From contig NC_069006.1 of assembly GCF_001194135.2 (NCBI RefSeq), forward strand, positions 5,852,536 to 5,898,702: 46,167 bases of DNA. The letters are read 5' to 3'. Below the pieces are notes generated by a model. That model was not told where the DNA came from. It ran no database searches and was given only the letters and a program-made list of their open reading frames with translations. The position numbers were made by a program, and so were the translations under genes. Source of the stretch: Octopus bimaculoides (lineage: Eukaryota). How positions within the stretch are numbered: the stretch's first letter is position 1; each line of letters begins with the position of its first letter. Below, in pieces: positions 12,135-45,672 of this stretch.

Positions 12135-13748
12135 CATCATCATCGTTTAACGTCCGCTTTCCATGCTAGCATGATTGGACGATTTGACTGAGGACCGGCA
12201 AGCCAGAAGGCTGCACCAGGCTCCAATCTGATCTGGCAGAGTTTCTACAGCTGGATGCCCTTCCTAATGCCAACCACTCTGAGAGTGTAGTGGGTGCTTT
12301 TACATGCCACTGGCACGAGGGCCAGTCACACGGTACTGGCAACGGCCATGCTCAAAAAGGTGTTTTTTACGTGCCACCTGCACAGGAGCCAATCCAGCAG
12401 CACTGGCAACGACCTCGCTCGAATGATTTCCTAACGTGCCACCAGCACAAGTGCTAGAAGGCAACGCTGGTAATGATTACACTCAAATGGTGCTATTTAC
12501 GAGCCACTAGCACGGAAACCAGAAAACTGCTCAGGCAATGAACATGCTCGGACAGTGCTGTTAGTGCTTCACTGGTGCAGGTGCCAATCATCGAGTATGG
12601 TTCAATTATGATTTCGATTTCACTTGCCCCAACAGGTCTTAGCAAGCAGAATTTAGTGTCCAATGAAGGAGAGGTTGGCATGGATGCCAGTCGTCAGATT
12701 CGGTTCAATTTCGATTTCAAATTTCAAATTCCAAATCCCAAATTCACTTGCCTCAACAGGTCTTTGCAAGCAGAGTTTAGTGCCCAATGAAGTAAAGATA
12801 CAAATAAGTGAGTTGGCTACGCTTCTGGCAGGAATCACAGATTATGCTCTCACTTGCCTTGCCGGGTCTACTCACATATTGCATATTTCCAAAAGTCACG
12901 GTCAGAAGTCATTGCCTCGGTGAGGCCTCAAGTTTGAAGGTCGTGCTTCACCACCTCATCCCAGGTCTTCCTGGGTCTACCTCTTCCACAAGTTCCCTCA
13001 ACTGCTAGGGTGTGGCACTTTTTCACACACCTATCCTCATCCATTCTTGCCACATGACCATACCAGCGCAATCGTCTCTCTTGCATACCATAACTGATGC
13101 TTCTTAGGTTCAACTTTTTTCTCAAGGTACTTACACTCTGTCGAGTATGCACACTGACATTACACATCCATCGGAGCATACTGGCTTCGTTTCTTGCAAG
13201 CTTACACATGTCCTCAGCAGTTACAGCCCATGTTTCACTGCCATGTAGCATGGTTATTTGTACACATGCGTCATACAGTCTGCCTTTTACTCTGAGTGAG
13301 AGGCCCTTTGTCATCAGCAGAGGTAAGAGCTCTCTAAACTTTGCCCAGGTTATTCTTATTCTAGCAGCTACACTTTCAGTGCACCCTCCCCTGCTACANN
13401 NNNNNNNNNNNNNNNAGCGGAAGCTATCAACTACTTCTGGTTTTTCTCCCTGGTATGTGGCAAAAGTTGTTTTCTGCACATTTTCAGTGTTTATTGCTCC
13501 TGAGCATCTGCCACATACAAAAACTATCTTGCTAGTTAGTCTTCCTTTGATATTGCTGCACTTCTTATGTGTTCATGGCTTACACTGGGTACATCTTATG
13601 GAGTTTCTACCTATGCCTTTTCTACAGATCGAGCAGGGCCATCTACCTGAAGGGGTTTATGTTTTGTCTACCTTCCTACTTATTAGGACTTTGGTTTTAG
13701 CTAGGTTGACTCTAAGGCCTTTCGATTCTAGTCCTTGCTTCCACACCT
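12135..13748 (-). mobile_element. 5'-truncated RTE-clade LINE (end of ORF plus long 3' UTR and (GAT)n tail)
   Basis: ORF relic 13748-12868 with RTE C-terminal motifs (RIRITWAKFRELLPLL, HGSETW, RRLRWYGHVARM, GRGRPRKTW) and in-frame stops. The 3' end is ...GGACGTTAAACGATGATG. Confidence 0.95.
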
Positions 13749-17272: not shown

Positions 17273-18777
17273 TATGTTAGTTTATTTTTAAACAGACATT
17301 GTAGGGTAGGTGTGAGAGGTCAGATCTGGCCAGTTTGAACTCAAAGCAAGTAAAATATTTGGTCTGGATATGGCTAGTTTAAATGCTATAGAGTTAAATA
17401 ATAAAATATACAATCATGCATTTAACCCTTGCCTCCTAATCTTCGTGGTTCTCTGCCAAAACTTAAAACCATTATCATTACTTTGATCTTAGTACAATTT
17501 ATTGTGATATTCTTATCGGGTCTGTTAGAGTGGCACAGATGGTATCATGTTGAGCAGTAATTAATTTCATTTACTAATGACTGGGTTCAAATCCTGCCAG
17601 TTAGCTTCGACATTGCATTTTATCCCATCATTGTTCTGCAGGAAATATTTACTATATCCAGTTCAATAGACACTTGCTGCTCCAACACAACATCAGTGTG
17701 TGTGTGTGTGTGTGTGTGCAAATTTTATTATGCAATAACCCATGCCAGCATGGACATGGATGATGAAATTTATTTCGAGCCAAGAAGTCATCAGCTGACT
17801 GTGGTACCTCAAAACCCGAATGACAGGCTGAACAGAGATGCCAACAGCAACTGGTCTTTTAGCTGAGTAAATAGGATAATAATATCCTTTTATTAATTTA
17901 GACTTCACCAGATAAATACAGTTGTTCAAATCACAAAGGCATACATCTTGCTTGGCCATGTGTTGTTGTTGGTTAATCCTGAGTCCATGACCTGTGATCT
18001 AAAGCATTCCAATTGTGGCCATTCCATGATTTTTTTCTAGATATAGTGCGTCACATACAGACTATATGTTATCTACTGTGTTCTTTGGTGATATGAGGGA
18101 GATTTGGTTGCTATTTCTTGCAGGTCAGGTGATAGCATAGTTGATCCCCCATTTTATTGGTTTAACATTTTTGTTGCTGTATTGCTATTTGGAATACCCT
18201 GCCATTGCTTTAATTAATTTTGAAAATAATGGAAGAATTTATTAAAATAACTATGTCATTAATTAAGCCAGTGTTTCGAATATAAACTAATATGAAATTT
18301 TAATGAAAGTTTTAGATCATTTTAAAACAGTGAATTAGTATCATAAGTGCAGTTTCAGGCAGGTTAATATTGCAAGGATTAAACAGAGAATTTAACATCT
18401 GCTCTCATACCCTTGCCATGGGATTTCTCATTGTAAAGGAAGTGAAGTAGCTTTCTACTGGGAATCAAAACCAAATTGCTAACTTGGATTCTTTTGGTGC
18501 CAGTCTCCACTTAGCCATATTCTACACTGTTGCACTGGTTACCTATTTTAATTAAACATAAGCATCTAATCAAAAATAACATTCAGATAAAATAAAATAA
18601 AATAAAACTGAATTAATTATATGTATCAGATTCCATCTAAAATAGTTTTCTTATCCACGTTTACTTTATGATAAAATACTTCATTCTATGTCTTGGTTGT
18701 TTTTTTAAACTTTTTCTCTGCTAACCATATTTCCAAGGAAATACACAGCAACACATTTTGAAAATGATTAACTATAT

Positions 18778-19530
18778 AGGCACAGGCATGGCTGTGTGGT
18801 AAGAAGCTTGCTTCCCAACCACAGGGTTCTCTGAAGTCACTCTCACTGCATGGCACCTTGGGCAAGTGTATTCTACTATGTTGGCACTCCATCGCTTACA
18901 ACGTCGAGGGTTCCAGTTGATCCGATCAACGGAACAGCCTGCTCGTGAAATTAACGTGCAAGTGGCTGAGCACTCCAGACACGAGTACCCTTAACGTAGT
19001 TCTCTGGGATATTCAGCGTGACACAGTGTGACAAGGCTGACCCTTTGAATTACAGGCACAACAGAAACAGGAAGTAAGAATGAGAGAAAGTTGTGGTGAA
19101 AGTGTACAGCAGGGTTCGCCACCATCCCCTGCCGGAGTCTCGTGGAGCTTTTTAAGTCCGCTGCCCTAACCACTGGGCCATTGCGCCTCCATGTATTCTA
19201 CTATAACCTAAGGCCAACCAAAATCTTGTGAGTGGATTTGGTAGAAGGAAACTGAAAGAATTCCGTCATGCATGTGTGTTTGTGTGTGTGTGTGGCTGTG
19301 TGTTAAGAAGCTTGCTTCCCAACCACATGGTTCTCTGAACTCTCTCTCACTGCATGGCACCTTGGGCAAGTGTCTTCTATAACCTAGGGCCAACCAAAAT
19401 CTTATGAGTGGATTTGGTAGAAGGAAACTGAAAGAATCCCGTCATGTGTGGCTGTGTGGTAACAAGCTTGCTTCCCAACCACAGGGTTCTGAATTCACTC
19501 CCGCTGCATGGCACATTGGGCAAGTGTAAG
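18778..19530. mobile_element. Cluster of SINE family A heads (+) with a nested SINE family C (-, ~18878-19190)
   Basis: Repeated GGCTGTGTGGTAAGAAGCTTGCTTCCCAACCAC heads. The family C copy (GTTGGCACTCCATCGCTTACAACGTCGAGG...GGGCCATTGCGCCTCCA) splits the first head. Confidence 0.8.
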
Positions 19531-26501: not shown

Positions 26502-26614
26502 TTGGTCCCCGCAGAGAGTAGTGATAACCAGTCCCAGTGTACAGATTCTCAAGCAGGAGATATACCCCCCGAACGATTAGGGGGCATCGGGGACAGCCGA
26601 CCACCTTCATTTCA
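26502..26614 (+). CDS. dsh/DVL: Internal coding exon of Dishevelled (segment immediately C-terminal to the DIX domain; equivalent to DVL exon 3)
   Basis: 113-nt exon with acceptor gtgatttctttacAG (AG 26500-26501) and donor TTTCA|GTAAGT (GT 26615-26616). It translates LVPAESSDNQSQCTDSQAGDIPPERLGGIGDSRPPSF+CA, matching the Dishevelled motif (W)LV.AE...ERTGGIGDSRPPSFH. Phase 0 start and phase 2 end agree with the vertebrate DVL exon as I recall it. Confidence 0.95.
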
Positions 26615-26880: not shown

Positions 26881-27239
26881 TTCAGACATATGTATGCACC
26901 TATCTTTCTCTATGTAACCATCTATCTATATGCATACATACATACATACCTACCTTCCTCTATATATTCCCCTATCCACACACATGCTCACATGCCACCC
27001 TGTACCCCAGATTTGTTTATTATTCTCGAGTTGATTTCAGTCATTGGATGAGGGCCACGCTAGGACACTGCTTTCCAGGGTTTTACCATATCATATTGGA
27101 CCCCCACCTCCAAGCATATATTTCAGTCTGGTTACTTACTTTGTTGACCCATTTTTAATTTATAGGATGTAAGGAGACCCCTGTAGCATAAACTACTTTG
27201 GTTCTTAGATCATTTCATTTCATATTCTGGCCAAGTCTG

Positions 27240-27520
27240 AACCAGAGACCTAAGGCATGTATATATTGGATGGAGAGAAACTTCTTGAGAATGTGGGCTG
27301 TTGATGTCAACACAATTTCTTGAGTCTCAAAGATTGTTGGTTTCCCAGGAATCTGGTCAAAACATTTGTCACTACTTTTCTTGATCATTCCCAGGGCACC
27401 TACAACAACAGGGATGGTTTTGGTTTTTAATTGCCATGACCTAGATATCTCAGTCTGAAGGTCTTTATGTTTCAACAGTGTGTCAAATTCCTTTGCTGAG
27501 ATTATTATTATTATCTCTAT
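27240..27520 (-). mobile_element. R4/Dong-clade non-LTR retrotransposon 3' fragment (restriction-like endonuclease)
   Basis: KHKDLQTEISRSWQLKTKTIPVVVGALGMIKK...QIPG.P....Q.IVLTSTAHIL is the typical RLE C-terminus. Confidence 0.85.
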
Positions 27521-27733
27521 TGTTTTGTTGTCATTATTATTATTATATTTTGAACTATTGCTTTGTATTTGTACACGTTGACTCCAAGTCTCACCCGCAG
27601 ATCTCAAGAGAGAAGTTAAAAGTTCAAGTTGGTGTTATGACTAGGGTGTCATATATTTGGTTCTGCACAAAGTATTGTTCGAGAGAATGTCTAAGAAAAC
27701 TAAGAAAATTATAAGTTTGTTTTAAAATTGGGA

Positions 27734-28186: not shown

Positions 28187-28671
28187 NNNNNNNNNNNNNN
28201 NNNNNNNNNNNNNNNNNNNNNNNNNNNNNNNNNNNNNNNNNNNNNNNNNNNNNNNNNNNNNNNNNNNNNNNNNNNNNNNNNNNNNNNNNNNNNNNNNNNN
28301 NNNNNNNNNNNNNNNNNNNNNNNNNNNNNNNNNNNNNNNNNNNNNNNNNNNNNNNNNNNNNNNNNNNNNNNNNNNNNNNNNNNNNNNNNNNNNNNNNNNN
28401 NNNNNNNNNNNNNNNNNNNNNNNNNNNNNNNNNNAATTAATTTCTAAGAATGTGAAAATAACAAGAAAAACATTAAAAAAAAAACAAATGCAACAGCGCC
28501 ATCGTCGCCACTCGGAATCGTTCAGATTTTGTAAAACACCATGATGTTTATATTGGCCTGCTTCAAGAGTTGATACGGTTTAGCTTTAAAGGGTTTCAAA
28601 TTACAATTTAATTTAAAATACATTAATGCCAAATTTCCTTTCTTCTTTTTTCATTAAATAATGATAGCAGC

Positions 28672-29115: not shown

Positions 29116-29506
29116 TCCTTAATAATAATAATAACAATGACAATAAGAATAATAATTATGATGACGACGACAATGATGGTTTCTTATATTCACTGTAGGN
29201 NNNNNNNNNNNNNNNNNNNNNNNNNNNNNNNNNNNNNNNNNNNNNNNNNNNNNNNNNNNNNNNNNNNNNNNNNNNNNNNNNNNNNNNNNNNNNNNNNNNN
29301 NNNNNNNNNNNNNNNNNNNNNNNNNNNNNNNNNNNNNNNNNNNNNNNNNNNNNNNNNNNNNNNNNNNNNNNNNNNNNNNNNNNNNNNNNNNNNNNNNNNN
29401 NNNNNNNNNNNNNNNNNNNNNNNNNNNNNNNNNNNNNNNNNNNNNNNNNNNNNNNNNNNNNNNNNNNNNNNNNNNNNNNNNNNNNNNNNNNNNNNNNNNN
29501 NNNNNN

Positions 29507-33932: not shown

Positions 33933-35016
33933 ACATTGCAAACATTGCAAATAGGAGCAAAGGTAAACTTCCAGATTTATCAGTTAGTGCACCCAAATTT
34001 GTTGTTACACTTTCAGATGTTTAAAAAAAAAAAAAACCTCTTTATTTGTTTTAGGATTACATTTAGCAGATTACCTTATTTATTTACTGGCAGGCGAGAG
34101 AGAGAGAGATAAATAAATAAAAATACAAGAACAAAATTCAAGAAGTTATTTTAGGAACTGGATAGATTACTGCCCAGAAAGCCATATGTTGGATAGAACT
34201 AAGATNNNNNNNNNNNNNNNNNNNNNNNNNNNNNNNNNNNNNNNNNNNNNNNNNNNNNNNNNNNNNNNNNNNNNNNNNNNNNNNNNNNNNNNNNNNNNNN
34301 NNNNNNNNNNNNNNNNNNNNNNNNNNNNNNNNNNNNNNNNNNNNNNNNNNNNNNNNNNNNNNNNNNNNNNNNNNNNNNNNNNNNNNNNNNNNNNNNNNNN
34401 NNNNNNNNNNNNNNNNNNNNNNNNNNNNNNNNNNNNNNNNNNNNNNNNNNNNNNNNNNNNNNNNNNNNNNNNNNNNNNNNNNNNNNNNNNNNNNNNNNNN
34501 NNNNNNNNNNNNNNNNNNNNNNNNNNNNNNNNNNNNNNNNNNNNNNNNNNNNNNNNNNNNNNNNNNNNNNNNNNNNNNNNNNNNNNNNNNNNNNNNNNNN
34601 NNNNNNNNNNNNNNNNNNNNNNNNNNNNNNNNNNNNNNNNNNNNNNNNNNNNNNNNNNNNNNNNNNNNNNNNNNNNNNNNNNNNNNNNNNNNNNNNNNNN
34701 NNNNNNNNNNNNNNAAAGCTCTGGTTGGCCTGGGTTTATATCAAAAGACATTTTTCCAGTGTACAATGCAGTGGGACTGAACTTGAAACCATGTGGTTGG
34801 GAAGCAAACTTCTTAACTACACAGCCACACCTGGGTAAAAAAAAAAAAACCTGTCTGAATATAGGTGTGTTTTTAATATATGTTTGTATGCTTTTCCTTA
34901 TTTACATCACACAAGCACACACATACATGTGCACACGCTCATATATACCTTACATGCATCCATATTACTGACCCAGAACAAAATAGAATTACACGTAATA
35001 TGTATGCATGCCTACA

Positions 35017-38235: not shown

Positions 38236-40221
38236 NNNNNNNNNNNNNNNNNNNNNNNNNNNNNNNNNNNNNNNNNNNNNNNNNNNNNNNNNNNNNNNNN
38301 NNNNNNNNNNNNNNNNNNNNNNNNNNNNNNNNNNNNNNNNNNNNNNNNNNNNNNNNNNNNNNNNNNNNNNNNNNNNNNNNNNNNNNNNNNNNNNNNNNNN
38401 NNNNNNNNNNNNNNNNNNNNNNNNNNNNNNNNNNNNNNNNNNNNNNNNNNNNNNNNNNNNNNNNNNNNNNNNNNNNNNNNNNNNNNNNNNNNNNNNNNNN
38501 NNNNNNNNNNNNNNNNNNNNNNNNNNNNNNNNNNNNNNNNNNNNNNNNNNNNNNNNNNNNNNNNNNNNNNNNNNNNNNNNNNNNNNNNNNNNNNNNNNNN
38601 NNNNNNNNNNNNNNNNNNNNNNNNNNNNNNNNNNNNNNNNNNNNNNNNNNNNNNNNNNNNNNNNNNNNNNNNNNNNNNNNNNNNNNNNNNNNNNNNNNNN
38701 NNNNNNNNNNNNNNNNNNNNNNNNNNNNNNNNNNNNNNNNNNNNNNNNNNNNNNNNNNNNNNNNNNNNNNNNNNNNNNNNNNNNNNNNNNNNNNNNNNNN
38801 NNNNNNNNNNNNNNNNNNNNNNNNNNNNNNNNNNNNNNNNNNNNNNNNNNNNNNNNNNNNNNNNNNNNNNNNNNNNNNNNNNNNNNNNNNNNNNNNNNNN
38901 NNNNNNNNNNNNNNNNNNNNNNNNNNNNNNNNNNTATATATATATAGAAAGAGAGATGCACACACATGCAAAAAACAATGAGTATTCAGGCACCCATTCC
39001 CCCTTTCATGCCTGTTCCCTCATACAGGCACTTGTGTGCGTGCGTGGGTGTGCACATGAATTTAAAGAATGGTAGAAACAACACATGTACCAACACCAAA
39101 TTGAAGCAGCTGCAGTCTGGTGTTGGTGGATTAAATAATTCTCCAGTAAAAGTGTCTGAAGCAAATTGCAATATGTTCGTGCATTGCACATGTGTTAAAG
39201 AAATTACACTGGAAATTCTTTGTGTACGTGTGTGTATGTGTGTGGATATTATATGAACGTGTGCTTGTGTGTGTGTGTGTATATATATGTGTGTGTACAC
39301 ATACAAAGACACATATACATATATGAGCAAAATGAGTGTGTGCTTTATGTGCAAGAGCATTTTTATATTTTGTAGATGTATTTATATTATTTAATTTCTC
39401 CCCACCCCATCTCTCGCTCTCTCTTGACTACTCTTTCTCTTTTACTCATATCTTTGTCATCTTCCTCCCTCTCTCTCTCTCTCTGTATTATACCTTCTCT
39501 TGCCTACTGTTCAGTCTCTCTCTCTCTCTCACATTCTTATTTCTCTTTATCAATCAACTCCCAAAATCGTACACCAAACTAATACTCAAAATTTACATTT
39601 CTAGTAATATGTATGGGAAAGAAATAATTGTTTTCTATAGACATTGTGTAATATTACTAGTGTATGTGTGTGTGTGTGTGCGCATGTGTGTATTACTAGA
39701 GTGTGTATGTGTAAGCATTTGGTTATTTGTATTTATGGTATATGTTCCTTCTTATCATGGAAGGACACTAAGTTTATCTCTCTGAGGGCAGAGAAGTGTC
39801 TCTTGAGTGTTCTCAGGATACCCTCTGTCCTTGTTTGTTACAGACCCTTTTTATTAACTTTGAATAACAATGTCAACATTCTGAGGAGAGGCATTCGGGT
39901 CTTCACATCTTAGTCATAATCCCTTTGTCATCATAAGTTGATTGATTGAGAAATACTTGAGTAGGGCAAATGCAATTGTTGCCACTAGGCATTTGTTTAC
40001 CTTATTTTGAAGTGAAGATAATTTCTGTAAACCAAGAATACACACACTTGCATGTTTGCATATATGTATATAAGGTATTGGTATCTAGAAGACCCAAAGA
40101 GTGGCAGGTAATGCTAAGTAAGTGCTATAGACAGACCGTAGTTAAACTCTTGGTTCGATAGTGATACAAGAGAGGAGTCTAATGTGGGTCTCGTATTAGC
40201 ATGTATATATATATATATTTA

Positions 40222-40522
40222 TATTAGACAAAAAGAGATAACAAAGCCAAGGCTGTGAAGAGTTTTCAGGACATTTATAAGCGAAAAGATATTGATATAC
40301 TCTTACAGCTATTTCTGATATATTAGGGATATCCCTTCGTCAGAGACGATGTGAGATGGTTAGATAGAAGTAATTATCTGAGGTACCTCTATTTAACCAT
40401 CTCACATTGTCTCTACTGAAAGGATATCCATAATATCCCAGAAACAGCTGTAAGACTATATCCATGTCTCTTTCCTGAAAACTCCTCACAGCCTTGGCTT
40501 CGTTATCTCTTTTTGTCTAATA
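40222..40522. mobile_element. ~300-bp foldback (palindromic) element in a (TA)n tract containing two inverted hammerhead-like motifs
   Basis: Arms 40222-~40370 and ~40385-40522 are imperfect reverse complements (TATTAGACAAAAAGAGATAAC.AAGCCAAGGCTGTGA.GAGTTTTCAGGA...). Each arm carries a CUGANGA...GAAA-type motif. Confidence 0.85.
40300..40347 (-). ncRNA. Hammerhead motif with intact catalytic core (left arm of the foldback)
   Basis: GUCU-CUGACGA-AGGGAUAUCCCUAAUAUAUCA-GAAAU-AGCU-GUA-AGAG: palindromic AGCU stem III and GUA triplet; stems I and II are partly eroded. Confidence 0.6.
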
Positions 40523-41343
40523 TATATATATATATATATATATAGCCAAATCAAAGAACAAATAATTATACACGTAGCACCTTTGACCATTTTGGGGTCT
40601 CGGAGACTGGCAAATGATGTTATGTTCAAAAGGGAGAATCTAGTCTTAATGCCTACAATTGATTGGACTCTGCTAAAAAGACTTAGAAGGCAGAGTGTGG
40701 AGTTAAATTTGGCAATGGAGTAGGCCCATGATTAAGACCAAGAATTGCCTCAACTTAGAGTAAACTAGCTGCTTTCATTTCCGAAATATTCAAAGCACTT
40801 CCCAGTATCTAAGTGAATAATGATATCACTAGCCTTAGTTTGAAAACAAAGTGTTCTGGTTCAAATCCAGTTAGGGACCATAAAATCCTGTCCAGGATTA
40901 CCGGATGACAATCCGTGACCAAACTTATTTGATTGCAGTGGAAATATAAATATTGTAAATATCTGGTGTAATGTTGTGATTAATTGTCCAAAAATTTATT
41001 AACTGTATCCAGTTTTATTAAGTGTTACATATTGCAATTTACCTGATGGACTGGAGTCCAGTGAATCTTTATCAATATCTGTGTGTGTGTATAATGAGGG
41101 TGCATGGCCTAGTGGTTAGAGTGTTGCTTGTACTCTGGATTGTGAGATTGTGGTTTCATTCCTGGACCAAGTGGTGGATTGTATTCTTTGCTTACATGGT
41201 TCCTGACATGTGGCACACTTTGCGCCTGTTCAGGTGATATTGCATTGATGGATGGAGCAAACAAATATACCACACAACAAACATTTGATCACTATAAACA
41301 AATCATTTGTGCTGGTCATTCAGCAAAAAATGAACACTCATAC

Positions 41344-41430
41344 GTTGTCTTTGATGGGCTATTCCATCATGTGTTGTCTTTGATGGGCTATTCCATCATA
41401 TGTTGTCTTTGATGGGCTATTCCATCATGT
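41344..41430. repeat. 29-bp tandem repeat x3 with internal hairpin
   Basis: GTTGTCTTTGATGGGCTATTCCATCAT(G/A)T; each unit has a TGATGG/CCATCA stem; no spacers. Confidence 0.95.
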
Positions 41431-41764
41431 GTGTGTATGTTGTAGTTCAAGTGAAACAAACAAGTGGCATCACACGTACAACAATAATTAATATGAGAAA
41501 TATTCCTTGCACCATCAGTGGAAGGAAGTCAATCTGTCCTTCATGAATTGAAGAATGTTTGGCCCAGATCTTTGAGAATGTTATCAAATGTGGTAGGCAT
41601 CTATGGATGGTCAAAAGGTATTATAGTTAAAACATTGTGACTGTAACAACCAAGATGAAGACATCATTTGGAATATATCAGAGTATAATTCTACTGCAGT
41701 AACCTAAGACTTGTAACTTCTCCCACTGTTAAATTATAAAGCCCTACCGATTCATTCGTGTTAC

Positions 41765-42130
41765 TATCCATCCATCCATCCATTTCCGCTGCCTGCTATT
41801 CCTGCAAGGGTTGTGGGAGTAGAGTCCTCTGGCACCACCTCCTCCATAGGGTCCTATCAAAAGCAACCGTCATTGCACTTTCCTGCTGAGACTGTAGATA
41901 CTATCAAACCATCTCATTCTTGGTCTGTTCTTGGCTCTCCTGCTGGTTGACTCAGTAGGAAGAATTTATCTTGTGATCCTTTACTGCGACATTGTAATCA
42001 CATGTCTGCTGCACTGGGACTATGACCCCTTCAGTTTGGAGAAATAGTGGCTAGACCTGGAGGAGATCCACCTGATCTCCAAGCTCTGCATGCTGTTGAG
42101 TAGCATTACCTCAGAGATCGTTTGGAGGAA
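41765..42130 (-). mobile_element. Old RTE-like LINE 3' end (different family) with (GGAT)n tail
   Basis: Minus-strand RRAKNRPRMRWFDSIYSLSR..AMTVAFDRTLWRR resembles the RTE C-terminal R.GRP..RW...DR..WR motif; tandem-repeat tail. Confidence 0.6.
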
Positions 42131-42134
42131 CCCC

Positions 42135-42475
42135 GAGGTGCATGTCTCAGTGGTTAGAGTATCGGGCTCAATATCATGAGGTAGTAAGTTTGAGTCCCAG
42201 ACTGGAATGTGTGTTGTGTTCTTAAGCAAGACACTTTATTTCATGATTGCTCCAGTTCACTCAGCTGTTGAAATGAGTTGTGACATCACTGATGCCAAGC
42301 TGTATCGGCCCCTTTGCCTTTTCCCTTGGATATCATCAGTGGCGTAGAGAGGGGAGGCTGGTGTGCATGGGTGATTGCTGGCCTTCCATAAACAACCTTG
42401 CCTGGACTTGTGCCTCAGAGGGTAACTTTCTAGGTGCAAGCCTATGGTCATTCATGATTGAAGGGGGGTCTTTTT
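42135..42475 (+). mobile_element. SINE family D, near full length
   Basis: tRNA-like head, GTGTTCTTAAGCAAGACACTTTATTTC..TTGCTCCAGTTCACTCAGCTG domain and T-rich end. Confidence 0.75.
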
Positions 42476-43203
42476 GCTATAGAAAGAAAAGTTAGAAAAT
42501 AGCACACCAACATGTCAGATATTTGGATAGCTAATGGCTGTTTTGTTTTATTTTGATATACAAGCAAACCTCAACTTATGTTGTTTTAAGATATACCTTC
42601 TTTGATTTTATATTGTTTTCCCAAGAAGTTAATGGGAAAAAAAAAAAAAAAAAACTCAACTTCAGTTGATTTATTCAACTTTATGTCAGTCAAAGTGAAC
42701 TTATTTAAAAGCAACAAGTTTTTCTTTTTAAAAAAAACCTACTTAAAAACCAATACTGATGTAGAAAATCATATAAAATACACATGAAAACCCATTTATT
42801 CAGACATGTGAGATTTGAAATTTTTAAAAATGTTTTTTTTATGTGAAGTCAGTTTTTGAGTTAAGTCACATGTCTTGGAACTGGAGCCAATGACTGCTGA
42901 GAAATGAGATTTGGCTGTGTATTATTCAGATTATTATAAATGGTTTTACGTAAATGCTCTTCTTATGCCTTTACTATCTGCTTTGAAAAGACAAAAAAAA
43001 CTAAAACNNNNNNNNNNAATAATAACTGTGTAACAAACATCCTTGTTTTTCTCTCTCTTTGTTTTTTTTTTTGTTTTTTTTTTGTTTAATTAATTAAGCA
43101 ATTAATTAACCAATTGAAGATTGAAATTGTAATATTTTGTGATACTAACATATAGACTTCTCTCTTTCTTTCTTTCTTTCTCTTTACCATTTGCTTCTTG
43201 AAG

Positions 43204-43248
43204 GAAAAAGTCACTGGAAGGAGGTCATGATCTCAGGCATAAATGCAG
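43204..43248 (+). CDS. Candidate 45-nt cassette microexon (phase 2-2), possibly of Dvl: (Q)KKSLEGGHDLRHKC(S)
   Basis: Perfect branch point TACTAAC at 43143-43149, a ~45-nt polypyrimidine tract, acceptor AAG at 43201-43203 and donor TGCAG|GTATAA. Length is divisible by 3 and it is open in the phase-2 frame left by the Dvl exon. No protein homology recognised. Confidence 0.45.
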
Positions 43249-43602
43249 GTATAATATCATTATAATATCATTATAATATCAATATAAACTACTCTCATTT
43301 TATTTTCCTTTTGTTACTCCGTCTCTTGTTAAAAGTTGCTGTTGTTTGAGAGTGTTGGAAAAAAATACCTTGTTATTACTATTGCTTCCATCACCAACTC
43401 CACAACCAGCTGAGATGGCATTATTTATCTTGTCTGTGTGTCCTATCTTGCTCTGTTTACTTGTTACATCAGCTCTCTCCTCCACCTCTTCTTTATATCC
43501 ACCCCTAATTATACTAGAGAGAGAGAGAGAGACTGTTCATGGCACTAACTGTTGTCTCATTACCACCCCTGCTTAGCTCTCACTTGTACCATTGACCTCC
43601 AG

Positions 43603-43644
43603 TTTAGCATTTAAACGTGAACGACAACGGCAGCAACAAAAATG
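43603..43644 (+). CDS. Candidate 42-nt cassette microexon (phase 2-2), possibly of Dvl: (H/S)LAFKRERQRQQQK(W/C)
   Basis: Acceptor gacctccAG (43601-43602), donor AAATG|GTGAGC, branch-point candidates CACTAAC (43543-43549) and CTCAC (~43579-43583). Only the phase-2 frame is open. No homology recognised. Confidence 0.4.
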
Positions 43645-43777
43645 GTGAGCCTATTGTGAAGAGCCTCTATGTAATCACTCAATTTGCTAGAAATAGCTGC
43701 CAAACTCATTACCCTGTGTAACACAATTTTTTGTCCTTGGGTTGCTGCTGTTATTTTTCTGTTTACTTTACCCCTAG

Positions 43778-44047
43778 AAAGTATGAAAAATGGCTTCAAA
43801 CTTTGCTTTTGCAACAACATTTATTCAGACTCCAAAATCCCTTTCAACACGTGGCTATTATGCCACCTCACTACTCTTGCTCAAGATCAGAGATGCACAT
43901 ATTGTCAGCCACTAAGGGACATGCTCAACCGGTTAAGATCAAGCAACTGACAAGCAGATCTGTGGTATTGAGCAGAATATTTGCTATAATGATATTTCTG
44001 CTTCAGCAACTCAGAGCTGAATCTCTCTGAAATGTAATGGAAAACAG
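43778..44047 (+). other. Candidate 270-nt exon carrying in-frame stops (poison or terminal exon?)
   Basis: Strong acceptor ttatttttctgtttactttacccctAG (43776-43777) and donor AAACAG|GTCAGT (GT 44048-44049). All three frames contain stops. Confidence 0.25.
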
Positions 44048-44207
44048 GTCAGTTTCAAAACATTGATGTCCAGGTGACAAAAGCAAAGGGAATAATAGTC
44101 ATTCCCTTTGATTTCAAGATATAAGCAAATAGGAAATAACACCTACTACTGCCCCCCCCCCCAATTCATTACACAGTGTTAATTCTATTTTCATTATTGA
44201 AAGTTGA

Positions 44208-44421
44208 AAGGCAACAGGCTAGCAGAATCATTAGTATGTTGGGCAAAATGCTTAGCAATATTTCTTCTAGCTCTTTAGGTTCTGAGTTCAAATTCTGGTT
44301 AGGTTCACTTTGCCTGTTGTCATCAAGGGGATCAATAAAGTATGTACCAGTTGAACTCTGTGGTCAGTGTAATCAACTAGCTCCGTCCCCCCAAAATTCT
44401 GAGTTTTGTGCTAATAGTAGA

Positions 44422-44454
<33 letters not shown>

Positions 44455-45285
44455 CATAATAATTATCAACCTCAGTGGAATTTGAACTCAGAAAGTAACG
44501 GCAGACTAAATATAATAATGATAATTATAATTATTATGAGTTGATGAGCTAGCAGACTCATTAACATGTGGGACAAAAATGCTTAGCAGCATTTCTTCTG
44601 TTGTCCTCTACTGGGGGTCAATAAAATATGTACCAGTTGAACTCTGGGGTCAATGTAATCAACTAGCTCCCTCCACCAAAATTCCAAGCCTTGAGCTAAT
44701 AGTAAAAATAATAATACTTTGCCTGTCACCCTTTCGGGGTCGATGAATTAAGTACCAGTTGCGTACTGGGTTAATCTAATCGACTGGCCCCCTCTCCACA
44801 AATTTCAGGCTTTGTGCCTATAGTGGAACGGTTCGTCGTCGTCGTTGTCAAGGTAATGAACTGGCAGAATCGTTAGCATGCCGGCAAGATGCTTAGTGAC
44901 ATTTCATGTGTCTTTAACGTTCTGAGTTCAAATTCCGCCAATAAAATACCTTTCCTCCATTAGGTACCAATAAAATTAGTCCCAGCTGGGCACTGAGATC
45001 AATGTATGTCCCCCACTCCCTAAATTTGCTGACCTTCTGCCAAAATTTGGATGCGTTATCATTAAAGTGGTGAGATGGCAGAATTGTTAGATCATTGAAT
45101 GAAATGTTTAATAATATTTCTTCCAACTCAATAAATTCTGAGTTCAAATTCTGCTGAGGCTAACTTTGCCTTTCATCCATTTGGCAGGTTGATAAAATAA
45201 GTACTAGTTCCATTCTGGGGCTGATGTAATCGACTTACGCCCCACCCTGGGGCCAATGTAATTCACTTACCCACTCCCTGCAAAT
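44208..45285. mobile_element. Cluster of at least 5 SINE family B copies or fragments
   Basis: Repeated (G)CTGGCAGAAT.GTTAG..ATGCTTAG..TTCTGAGTTCAAATT..GTACCAGTT motifs. Confidence 0.8.
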
Positions 45286-45287
45286 TT

Positions 45288-45672
45288 GTTGTTGTTGGCA
45301 CTCTGTTGCTTATGACGTCGAGGGTTCCAGTTGATCCGATCAATGGAACAGCCTGCTCGTGAAATTAACGTGCAAGTGGCTGAGCACTCCACAGACACGT
45401 GTACCCCTAATGTAGTTCTCGGGGATATTCAGTGTGACACAGTGTAACAAGGCTGACCCTTTGAATTACAGGCACAACAGAAACAGGAAGTAAGAGTGAG
45501 AGAAAGTTGTGGTGAAAGAGTACAGCAAGGCTCGCCACCATCCCCTGCCGGAGCCTCGTGGAGCTTTGGGTGTTTTCGCTCAATAAACACTTACAACGGC
45601 CGGTCTGGGAATCGAAACCGTGATCCTATGACCGCGAGTCTGCTGCCCTAACCACTGGGCCATTGCGCCTTC
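45288..45672 (-). mobile_element. tRNA-derived SINE family C, full length
   Basis: Minus strand GAAGGCGCAATGGCCCAGTGGTTAGGGCAGCAGACTCGCGGTCATAGGATCACGGTTTCGATTCCCAGACC (A/B boxes) through to a (CAA)n tail. Confidence 0.9.

What the first reader, a model, noticed from the sequence alone, without database searches (positions are those of the whole stretch)
43140..43650. Tandem frame-preserving microexon candidates that would insert a basic/Gln-rich peptide into the Dishevelled DIX-PDZ linker
Seen in sequence: inside a ~1-kb island free of SINEs lie a 45-nt exon (43204-43248) and a 42-nt exon (43603-43644). The first has a perfect TACTAAC branch point ~55 nt upstream, a long CU-rich tract and a CAG|GT donor; the second has a CAG acceptor and an ATG|GTGAG donor. 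Both are multiples of 3 and open in the phase-2 frame left by the Dvl exon (TTT CA|), and the second is open only in that frame. Spliced together they give ...RPPSF-QKKSLEGGHDLRHKCSLAFKRERQRQQQK(W/C). Established knowledge: the DIX-PDZ linker is a disordered, basic, phospho-regulated part of Dvl, and distal branch points with UCUU-rich tracts are typical of PTB-regulated, often neural, cassette exons. Inference: a lineage-specific, tissue-regulated Dvl isoform switch in Wnt/PCP signalling that I do not recognise from other animals.
Basis: partly seen in the sequence, partly recalled or inferred. Interest (0 to 1): 0.72.

Follow-up and report, generated by a model that had tools for sequence, protein, structure and literature searches.

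The report
One real Dishevelled mini-exon, one false
Of the two small candidate exons, the 45-base one is a genuine, already annotated coding exon of the cephalopod Dishevelled gene that squid-like relatives include or skip, while the 42-base one appears in no known transcript and is probably a chance look-alike.

Summary
The two candidates have different fates.

**45-nt exon (43204-43248): real.**
- Its peptide (Q)KKSLEGGHDLRHKC(S) sits exactly between ...GGIGDSRPPSF and ANPPHH... in all five Octopus sinensis DVL-3 RefSeq isoforms, in an O. vulgaris model and in an Argonauta hians model.
- Cuttlefish-type RNA-seq contigs differ only by presence or absence of this exact 45-nt block. This holds in two decapodiform species, so it is an alternative cassette there.
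- It is 93% identical in DNA between this window and Sepia.
- It is absent from the 91 other Dvl proteins retrieved, which include 20 or more non-cephalopod mollusc species.
- Its 3' splice region (CUAAC branch site, 46-nt AG-free CU-rich tract, UGC at -12, weak AAG acceptor) matches the published cis code of eMIC/Srrm-dependent neural microexons. Tissue regulation was not tested.

**42-nt exon (43603-43644): unsupported.**
- It is found in no protein or transcript.
- A competing AG lies upstream of its acceptor.
- Equally good candidates arise in more than half of shuffled introns.

The real exon splices straight to canonical exon 4, which lies outside the window. Verdict: partly supported. 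The genuine part is already in public gene models, so interest is modest.

The parts
26502..26614 (+). Dishevelled coding exon ('exon 3'). It encodes LVPAESSDNQSQCTDSQAGDIPPERLGGIGDSRPPSF plus CA (phase 2) and has donor GTAAGT.
   Evidence: tblastn. Pfam PF02377, 34 bits. The peptide is 100% identical to O. sinensis, O. vulgaris and Argonauta Dvl. blastn of Sepia transcripts ends at 26614.
43143..43149 (+). TACTAAC, containing CUAAC. This is the probable branch site of the 45-nt exon, with the branch A 55 nt from the acceptor.
   Evidence: only 3 copies in the window against about 7 expected, so the motif alone is not enriched; its position at the head of the AG-free zone is rare. The function is inferred.
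43156..43201 (+). AG-free, 93% pyrimidine tract with (TTCT)n and UCUC motifs, and UGC at 43192-43194 (-12 to -10).
   Evidence: It matches the eMIC-exon cis code described in PMC8797185. It also fits PTB-type motifs. Regulation is inferred.
43204..43248 (+). Genuine 45-nt Dishevelled cassette exon. With the CA of exon 3 and the T of exon 4 it encodes Q-KKSLEGGHDLRHKC-S. Inclusion replaces His with Gln and adds 15 residues net.
   Evidence: Its peptide is present in O. sinensis X1-X5, O. vulgaris and Argonauta. It is 93% nt-identical to the 45-nt block that is the only difference between the include and skip contigs of species B, and the only junction difference in Sepia esculenta.
43249..43287 (+). 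Weak donor GTATAA, running into an 11-nt tandem repeat (TATAATATCAT x3.5, 43250-43287).
   Evidence: (donor score 0.07). Any role of the repeat is unknown.
43603..43644 (+). 42-nt candidate (LAFKRERQRQQQK). It is most likely a chance pseudo-exon and not part of any known Dvl mRNA.
   Evidence: It is absent from 118 proteins and 18 transcript contigs. A competing AG lies at 43575-43576 between the CUAAC at 43545-43549 and its acceptor. Its score is typical of the best candidate in a shuffle. A Pfam gain equal to that of a shuffled control shows no homology signal. Its first 14 nt equal a MITE terminus.

Best explanation
**What it is.** The window is an intron-rich piece of an Octopus-type Dishevelled (DVL-3-like) gene.

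- The segment 43204-43248 is a real 45-nt internal coding exon, 16.6 kb downstream of the exon that ends ...GGIGDSRPPSF.
- When it is included, the mRNA reads ...PPSF-QKKSLEGGHDLRHKCS-ANPPHH....
- When it is skipped, exon 3 joins exon 4 directly and the mRNA reads ...PPSF-H-ANPPHH....
- Exon 4 is not in the window.
- The exon arose in the coleoid cephalopod lineage and has since been under strong purifying selection.
- In decapodiforms it is a regulated cassette.
- In octopods every gene model seen includes it.
- The segment 43603-43644 is not an exon of any known Dvl mRNA. It is best read as one of the many chance AG...GT open segments of a long intron.

**How it works (inferred).**
- Recognition of the weak AAG acceptor and weak GUAUAA donor depends on a strong distal CUAAC branch site, a long UCUC-rich tract and a UGC at -12. 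That is the cis code of Srrm/eMIC-dependent, typically neuronal, short exons.
- The 15 extra residues lie in the unstructured hinge just after the DIX domain.
- They add five basic residues, a KKS site and a Cys two residues after the conserved Ser that is phosphorylated in human DVL3 (Ser-116).
- The insert therefore most likely retunes phosphorylation or partner binding of this hinge. It is unlikely to create a new fold.
For: **Shown**
- The peptide is identical in XP_029651529-32, XP_036369721 (O. sinensis X1-X5) and CAI9741160 (O. vulgaris). Argonauta GAB1602178 has one G>V change.
- Transcript contig L006 (includes the exon) differs from L007/L008 (skip it) by 1 mismatch, a 6-nt repeat indel and exactly the 45-nt block between TCATTTCA and TGCCAATCC. 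L007/L008 come from SRR31864754/59, Sepia esculenta larvae (PMC11917092).
- L009-13 differ from L014-23 by 0 mismatches and the same block.
- blastn places the transcript junctions at window 26614 and at 43204-43248.
- Window versus Sepia: exon 3 is 90% identical and the microexon 93% (3 changes: 2 synonymous and 1 Gly>Ala). Window versus the second species: 86% and 93%.
- 91 other Dvl proteins read PPSF-HAN... with no insert, including all isoforms from 20 or more bivalve and gastropod species.
- Bivalve genomic loci show exon 3 joined to exon 4 across introns of about 260 nt and 2.2 kb.
- The 3' splice architecture is rare in the window: 2 of 5051 AG sites.

**From the literature**
- The eMIC cis code is described in PMC8797185.
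- Dvl linkers are unstructured, and Ser-116 in GIGDSRPPSFHP is phosphorylated with a PKC-type motif (PMC4156093).

**Against candidate 2**
-.
Against: - No RNA-seq reads from the window's own species could be mapped.
- No cephalopod genomic ortholog could be fetched. Splice-site conservation is therefore inferred from mRNAs only.
- Skipping is not shown in any octopod. All octopod models include the exon, and exact look-ups of hypothetical skipped octopod proteins found nothing (a weak negative).
- Tissue or neural specificity, Srrm/eMIC or PTB dependence, and any effect on phosphorylation are inference only.
- The run metadata were not available.
- At 45 nt the exon is longer than the strict microexon class of 27 nt or less.
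- A simple splice matrix did not separate the real exon from the false one. Sequence-only arguments against candidate 2 are therefore weak, and a rare octopus-specific use of it cannot be excluded.
Confidence: 0.85

Rival explanations
1. One reading: both segments are cassette exons used in tandem. Together they would insert QKKSLEGGHDLRHKCSLAFKRERQRQQQK(C) into the linker.
For: - Both are frame-compatible with each other and with exon 4. TG| plus T gives Cys, followed by ANPP.
- Candidate 2 has the best simple splice-matrix score in the intron.
- A CUAAC lies 53 nt upstream of its acceptor.
Against: - The peptide or DNA occurs in none of 118 proteins (10 of them cephalopod Dvl forms carrying candidate 1) or 18 transcript contigs.
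- Exact look-up of three hypothetical O. sinensis candidate 1 + candidate 2 proteins found nothing.
- An AG at 43575-43576 lies between the branch site and the proposed acceptor.
- 54% of shuffles contain an equally good candidate.
- The Pfam score gain equals that of a shuffled control.
Confidence: 0.05
2. In octopods the 45-nt exon is constitutive. It would be an ordinary fixed coding exon with no isoform switch, and alternative use would be confined to decapodiforms.
For: - All five O. sinensis RefSeq isoforms, the O. vulgaris model and the Argonauta model include it.
- No skipped octopod protein is in the collection.
Against: - Skipping is frequent in two decapodiform species, with 16 or more contigs.
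- The octopus exon keeps weak splice sites and the regulated-exon architecture.
- The look-up needs an exact full-length match, so it is a weak test.
- Gene models under-report minor isoforms.
Confidence: 0.35
3. Inclusion is controlled mainly by PTB-type repression of the CU-rich tract, rather than by Srrm/eMIC-type activation.
For: The tract 43156-43201 is full of UCUU and CUCUCU motifs, and the branch site is distal.
Against: - Any strong polypyrimidine tract carries such motifs.
- CT-rich simple repeats are common in this window. There are 11 tracts on the + strand.
- The additional UGC at -12, the strong CUAAC and the weak AAG acceptor fit the eMIC code better.
- The two mechanisms are not exclusive.
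Confidence: 0.25
4. Candidate 2 is a relic of the piggyBac-like MITE whose terminus shares its first 14 nt.
For: - There is an exact 14-mer at the end of the element at 10942-10955, and a 13/14 match at 17377-17390.
- 0.02 matches are expected by chance.
Against: - The similarity stops after the 14-mer.
- No TTAA lies next to it at 43603.
- The region is unique within the window.
Confidence: 0.15

Closest known systems
Annotated DVL-3 isoforms of Octopus sinensis (XP_029651529.1-32.1, XP_036369721.1), O. vulgaris CAI9741160.1 and Argonauta hians GAB1602178.1
   Same: They contain exactly the peptide encoded by 43204-43248, at exactly this junction. The flanking exon-3 peptide is 100% identical.
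   Different: These are gene models without comment. None lists a skipped form, and no paper in the searchable library describes the exon.
eMIC/Srrm(nSR100)-dependent neuronal microexons (PMC8797185)
   Same: - Short, frame-preserving exon in a disordered region of a signalling scaffold.
- Weak 3' and 5' splice sites.
- Long AG-free zone.
- UCUC-rich long pyrimidine tract.
- UGC close to the acceptor.
- Strong CUAAY branch site.
   Different: - At 45 nt it is longer than the strict class of 27 nt or less.
- Neural inclusion and Srrm dependence are untested.
- The exon is lineage-specific, whereas many neural microexons are ancient.
Neuronal microexon of DAAM1, the Dishevelled-associated formin (PMC12056172, title and abstract only)
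   Same: It is a short alternative exon that lengthens a linker in a Wnt/PCP pathway component.
   Different: It is a different gene and is vertebrate-conserved rather than cephalopod-specific. I read only its abstract.
Alternative basic cassette of bivalve and gastropod Dvl between exon 4 and ...PRINGH
   Same: It is an optional Arg/His/Ser-rich insert in the same DIX-PDZ linker. Examples are Haliotis +/- DRPSSRSSRHNHSSQYRDRHTAHL and Crassostrea +/- DGRSRHYRNHHRLNNDPN.
   Different: It is a different exon at a different position, one exon downstream. It has no sequence similarity. The cephalopod forms seen lack it.

Membership tests
Coding exon of Dishevelled (candidate 1, 43204-43248) | The encoded peptide is present in Dvl proteins or mRNAs at the predicted junction. 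| tested here: met
   There are 10 cephalopod Dvl sequences with PPSF-QKKSLE[GA][GV]HDLRHKCS-ANPP. blastn of the transcripts maps to 43204-43248.
Coding exon of Dishevelled (candidate 1, 43204-43248) | AG/GT boundaries, and the reading frame is kept with the flanking exons. | tested here: met
   Acceptor AAG|G, donor CAG|GT, 45 nt, open in the phase-2 frame.
Coding exon of Dishevelled (candidate 1, 43204-43248) | Junction reads from the same species as the window. | not testable with these tools
   No read-level RNA-seq is available. The window's genome is not in the contig collection.
Alternatively spliced cassette exon | Both the included and the skipped mRNA occur in one species. | tested here: met
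   This holds for Sepia esculenta (L006 versus L007/8) and a second decapodiform (L009-13 versus L014-23). The transcripts are identical except for the 45-nt block. For octopods the test is inconclusive.
Microexon | Length of 27 nt or less (strict), or 51 nt or less (broad). | tested here: inconclusive
   At 45 nt it fails the strict limit and meets the broad one. The limits are from my own knowledge of the field's usage.
eMIC/Srrm-dependent neural exon | Cis code: weak 3' splice site, long AG-free zone, UGC near the acceptor, UCUC-rich long pyrimidine tract, strong CUAAY branch site. | tested here: met
   All five features are present. The code is as described in PMC8797185. Only 2 of 5051 AG sites in the window share it.
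eMIC/Srrm-dependent neural exon | Neuron-enriched inclusion and dependence on the Srrm eMIC domain. | not testable with these tools
   Tissue metadata for the runs were not found. No perturbation data are available.
PTB-repressed exon | UCUU/CUCUCU clusters around the 3' splice site, plus de-repression when PTB is lost. | tested here: inconclusive
   The motifs are present but are not specific. Dependence is not testable here.
Coding exon of Dishevelled (candidate 2, 43603-43644) | The encoded peptide or DNA is present in any Dvl protein or mRNA. | tested here: not met
   There is no LAFKR or KRERQR in 118 proteins, and no blast hit in 18 transcripts. Three hypothetical isoforms are absent from the collection.
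Coding exon of Dishevelled (candidate 2, 43603-43644) | Homology to the Dishevelled-specific domain (PF02377) beyond composition. | tested here: not met
   Adding it raises the score by 6 bits. A shuffled version raises it by 7.7 bits, and an unrelated decoy by 5.2 bits.
piggyBac-type MITE remnant (candidate 2) | Similarity to the element extends beyond the terminal 14-mer, with an adjacent TTAA. | tested here: not met
   Only the 14-mer matches. No TTAA lies next to 43603.

The most novel reading that the evidence does not exclude
The 45-nt exon is a coleoid-cephalopod innovation recruited into the ancestral Srrm/eMIC neural splicing programme. Nervous tissue would then make a Dishevelled with an extra basic, phosphorylatable hinge segment next to the DIX domain and the conserved Ser (human DVL3 Ser-116). 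This would retune Wnt/PCP signalling in the expanded cephalopod nervous system. On this reading octopods have shifted towards near-constitutive inclusion, while decapodiforms keep the switch.
Probability: 0.3. Interest if true: 0.55.

Novelty: already known. Interest (0 to 1): 0.33.

Why it matters
**Biology.** Dishevelled is the hub of Wnt and planar-polarity signalling, and its DIX-PDZ hinge is a regulated, phosphorylated region. The 15-residue insert is restricted to coleoid cephalopods. It has been almost invariant since octopus and cuttlefish lineages split, and it is still switched on and off in cuttlefish-type species. That makes it a small but concrete example of lineage-specific rewiring of a core pathway by alternative splicing. 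It is directly testable with existing RNA-seq and simple reporter assays. It is not a new kind of mechanism, and the exon is already in public gene models.

**Method.** The case is also instructive.
- A reader working from raw sequence correctly called one real exon from its branch site and tract architecture.
- The same reader also called a false one.
- A simple splice-site null model could not tell them apart.

Tried and rejected
1. A first protein search with the 66-aa exon 3 + candidate peptide returned only four short ORFs and no cephalopod Dvl. This was a false negative. Hit lengths track query length, so the tool seems to favour proteins about as long as the query. A 595-aa concatenated query then retrieved full-length Dvl proteins.
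2. I fetched genomic loci for the four short ORFs. They turned out to be bivalve or gastropod: L004 is from the Acesta excavata gill metagenome (PMC8755941), L003 is abalone-like and L001/2 are clam-like. Their introns do not align to the window. They were useful only for defining canonical exon 4, HANAS..CDTCTETDSV.SSRR.
3. A 'SIAFKR' hit in L002 is part of a palindromic repeat, not an ortholog.
4. I asked whether candidate 2's KRERQRQQ is homologous to the vertebrate RRERxRRR patch. The Pfam test with shuffled and decoy controls showed no specific gain.
5. The splice weight-matrix null is informative about candidate 2. It wrongly suggested that candidate 1 was also unremarkable.
6. No genomic DNA of O. 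vulgaris or Argonauta could be fetched because the gene ranges exceed 100 kb, and the Acanthosepion model is not on record. A look-up of a window ORF also failed. Intron conservation therefore could not be tested.
7. Exact look-ups of hypothetical skipped and candidate 1 + candidate 2 octopod isoforms found nothing.
8. Run accessions for the second decapodiform and for SRR25158151 were not found in the paper library.
9. An AlphaFold model of O. sinensis X5 with a 25-sequence alignment had mean pLDDT 32. That is too poor to say anything about the insert.
10. Rfam, tRNA and Pfam scans of the window and of seven large ORFs found nothing.
Full report
**1. Observation**

- The Dishevelled exon runs 26502-26614. 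It encodes LVPAESSDNQSQCTDSQAGDIPPERLGGIGDSRPPSF and ends TTT CA|GTAAGT, which is phase 2.
- It hits human DVL1 by tblastn and Pfam PF02377 at 34 bits.
- Candidate 1 is 43204-43248 (45 nt). It lies between ttgAAG| and |GTATAA.
- TACTAAC sits at 43143-43149, with the branch A 55 nt from the acceptor. A CU-rich tract covers 43156-43201.
- Candidate 2 is 43603-43644 (42 nt). It lies between ctcCAG| and |GTGAGC, and it is open only in the needed frame.
- The 14-mer TTTAGCATTTAAAC recurs at the terminus of a repeated TTAA-flanked element at 10942-10955. A 13/14 match lies at 17377-17390.
- The window has eight N gaps. The only Dvl exon found by homology is exon 3.

**2. Chance**

I built a generic donor/acceptor weight matrix and scanned the intron stretch.

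- The 19.5 kb from 26615 to the window end hold 733 AG...GT segments of 24-150 nt that are multiples of three and open in the phase-2 frame.
- Candidate 2 ranks first and candidate 1 fourth.
- In 300 dinucleotide-preserving shuffles, the count is 659 +/- 45.
- 54% of shuffles contain a candidate at least as good as number 2.
- In 57% of shuffles the fourth-best candidate scores at least as well as number 1.
- TACTAAC alone is not enriched: 3 copies against about 7 expected.
- CT-rich tracts are common: 11 on the + strand.

On this test neither candidate exceeds chance.

A later, fuller test of 3' splice architecture gave a different picture. It required an AG-free zone of 40 nt or more, at least 80% pyrimidines, CUAAY at the head of that zone, and UGC within -22 to -3. 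Only 2 of 5051 AG sites in the window qualify, on both strands together. One of them is 43204.

**3. External evidence**

The first protein search used a 66-aa query and returned only four short ORFs from other molluscs.

- Their loci are bivalve or gastropod. L004 is from the Acesta excavata gill metagenome (PMC8755941).
- They share only exon 3 with the window.
- They did reveal canonical exon 4. In L004 and L001, cag|TGCYAATGC... encodes (H)ANAS..SRD..CDTCTETDSV.SSRR.
- That exon lies about 260 nt (L004) and 2.2 kb (L001) downstream of exon 3.
- Nothing like it is in the window.

A longer, 595-aa query then retrieved annotated Dvl proteins. These results settle the matter.

- O. sinensis DVL-3 isoforms X1-X5, O. 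vulgaris CAI9741160 and Argonauta hians GAB1602178 all read ...GGIGDSRPPSF-QKKSLEGGHDLRHKCS-ANPPHHGRENEPCDTCTETESILSSRRG... Argonauta has GV in place of GG.
- That is precisely exon 3 + candidate 1 + exon 4.
- RNA-seq-derived contigs from decapodiforms exist in two forms. One has QKKSLEAGHDLRHKCS (P0009-11). The other has PPSF-H-ANPP (P0012-14, P0108, P0109).
- L006 versus L007/L008 shows 1 mismatch in 2.4 kb, a 6-nt repeat indel and exactly the 45-nt block inserted between TCATTTCA and TGCCAATCC. L007/L008 are Sepia esculenta larvae (accessions listed in PMC11917092).
- L009-13 versus L014-23 shows 0 mismatches and the same block. This second species is 90.7% identical to S. esculenta.
- In that second species, the inclusion contigs come from 5 runs. 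The skipping contigs shown come from 10 other runs, out of 16 contigs carrying the skipped form.
- blastn of these transcripts against the window aligns exon 3 to 26501-26614/5 and the block to 43204-43248. Nothing else in the window aligns apart from a simple repeat.

**4. Conservation and distribution**

- Window versus Sepia: exon 3 is 90% identical (11 of 115 positions differ). The 45-nt exon is 93% identical, with 3 changes: AAA>AAG and CTG>TTG are synonymous, and GGA>GCA gives Gly>Ala.
- Window versus the second species: 86% and 93%.
- Across Octopus, Argonauta, Sepia and the second decapodiform, 14 of 16 residues are invariant. Variation is confined to the two glycines.
- Of 118 proteins fetched, the 10 with the insert are all cephalopod. 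The other 91 with a readable junction read PPSF-HAN... directly.
- Those 91 include every isoform retrieved from Pinctada, Mytilus (5 species), Haliotis (4), pectinids, oysters, unionids, venerids, Patella, Pomacea, Physella, Batillaria and Gigantopelta, plus fish.
- The exon is therefore a coleoid-lineage addition, as far as this sampling goes. Nautilus was not sampled.

**5. Candidate 2**

- No protein contains LAFKR or KRERQR, and no transcript contig matches its DNA or peptide.
- Three hypothetical O. sinensis proteins carrying candidate 1 + candidate 2 are absent from a 15-billion-sequence collection. That test requires an exact full-length match, so it is a weak negative.
- Adding the candidate 2 peptide to exon 3 raises the PF02377 score from 34.4 to 40.4 bits. 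A shuffled version gives 42.1 and an unrelated decoy 39.6. There is no homology signal.
- An AG at 43575-43576 lies between the only good branch site (CUAAC, 43545-43549) and the proposed acceptor. Using that AG would shift the frame.
- The MITE-end match is exact for 14 nt but does not extend, and there is no adjacent TTAA.
- I read candidate 2 as a chance pseudo-exon.
- The simple matrix also failed to flag the real exon. My rejection therefore rests mainly on the candidate's absence from mRNAs and gene models of five cephalopod species. I leave about 5% for a rare octopus-specific use.

**6. Mechanism**

What is shown:
- Inclusion replaces His with Gln and adds KKSLEGGHDLRHKCS immediately after the conserved GGIGDSRPPSF.
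- This position lies between the DIX and PDZ domains.

What is inferred about regulation:
- The exon has a weak AAG acceptor and a weak GUAUAA donor (scores).
- It also has a 46-nt AG-free zone, a UCUC/UUCU-rich tract, UGC at -12 to -10 and a perfect CUAAC branch site.
- This is the motif architecture reported for eMIC (Srrm)-dependent neuronal exons (PMC8797185).
The two are not exclusive.

What is inferred about function:
- Dvl inter-domain linkers are intrinsically unstructured.
- In human DVL3 the serine of GIGDSRPPSFHP (Ser-116) is a detected phosphosite with a PKC-type motif (PMC4156093).
- The insert places Lys-Lys at +3/+4 of that serine. It adds a second basophilic site (KKS) and a cysteine.
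- The most likely effect is altered phosphorylation or partner binding of the hinge next to the polymerising DIX domain.
- An AlphaFold model was too poor to add anything (mean pLDDT 32).

**7. Comparison and novelty**

- The exon is already present in RefSeq and GenBank gene models, so as a sequence feature it is known.
- I found no paper describing it.
- The following were assembled here from public data: its cassette behaviour in decapodiforms, its restriction to coleoids, its strong conservation and its eMIC-like architecture.
- It is an ordinary kind of thing, a lineage-specific alternative short exon in a disordered linker of a signalling scaffold.
- The same linker carries a different optional basic cassette in bivalves and gastropods.

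**8. Verdict**

- One of the two exons is real and conserved.
- The tandem model and the Gln-rich peptide are not supported.
- Tissue regulation is untested.
- Interest is modest (0.33).
- The most novel reading still open is neural, Srrm-driven inclusion that retunes a conserved phospho-hinge of Dishevelled in cephalopods. I rate it at about 0.3 probability and 0.55 interest if true.

Noticed in passing
Proteins P0017/P0018 vs P0046/P0047 (Haliotis); P0115 vs P0079 (Crassostrea): Bivalve and gastropod Dvl isoforms differ by an optional Arg/His/Ser-rich cassette between ...SSRR and ...PRINGH. This lies one exon downstream of the cephalopod insert. All cephalopod forms seen lack it. The DIX-PDZ linker looks like a recurrent site of alternative splicing in molluscs.
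   Followed up: partly
window 43250-43287: An 11-nt tandem repeat (TATAATATCAT, 3.5 copies, 96% matches) begins at position +2 of the real exon's weak donor. I do not know whether it affects splicing.
   Followed up: no
window 10738-10957, 10315-10535, 17280-17397 (- strand): There are three copies of a short element whose end follows a TTAA and starts (T/C)(C/T)CT(T/A)TAGCATTTAAAC. It looks like a piggyBac-type MITE. At 10958 it abuts another repeat that is also present at 18897-18994 and 45325-45411.
   Followed up: partly
window 681 (first base after an AG), within 521-1113: This is the only other AG site in the window with the same four-feature 3' splice architecture as 43204. It sits in a long CT-rich low-complexity stretch about 26 kb upstream of exon 3. 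It is probably meaningless but was not checked against transcripts.
   Followed up: no
window 44205-45567: A cluster of elements is repeated 2-6 times elsewhere in the window. By contrast, 40000-44204 carries no within-window repeat of 50 nt or more. The repeat-free zone around the exon is therefore about 4 kb, not 1 kb.
   Followed up: partly
Proteins P0008/P0103/P0104 vs P0006/P0007 (O. sinensis); also Mytilus, Haliotis, Patella, pectinids: A C-terminal optional segment...KDCTC[IL].STYN[HQ]L[RK]KLWENK[DN]KQ..., is present in some isoforms and absent in others across cephalopods, bivalves and gastropods. It is an apparently ancient alternative exon of mollusc Dvl.
   Followed up: no
Proteins P0101, P0102, P0105, P0114 (Acanthosepion pharaonis CAE1280464-68): These cuttlefish Dvl gene models begin with about 480 residues of SLSLSLFPLS... 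(a translated CT-rich repeat) and join exon 4 directly. They lack DIX, exon 3 and the 45-nt exon. This is very likely a mis-annotated 5' end.
   Followed up: no
window 12928-13479 (-) and 27215-27607 (-): These ORFs look to me like C-terminal tails of retrotransposon proteins (e.g. ...RRLRWYGHVARMDEDRCVKK...). Pfam gives no hit, so this rests on memory only.
   Followed up: partly
tool behaviour: the search for homologous proteins returned hits whose lengths tracked the query length. A 66-aa query gave hits of 48-100 aa, a 217-aa query gave 222-332 aa, and a 595-aa query gave 494-899 aa. Short queries therefore missed full-length proteins that contain them at 100% identity. Negative results from short queries should not be trusted.
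   Followed up: partly
window 1695-1935, 4593-5160, 13399-13415, 28187-28434, 29200-29506, 34206-34714, 38236-38934, 43008-43017: There are eight assembly gaps (N runs). One of them, 10 nt long, lies 190 nt upstream of the real exon. Exon 2 and exon 4 are not in the window, so both flanking introns are long: more than 26 kb upstream of exon 3 and more than 2.9 kb downstream of the 45-nt exon.
   Followed up: yes
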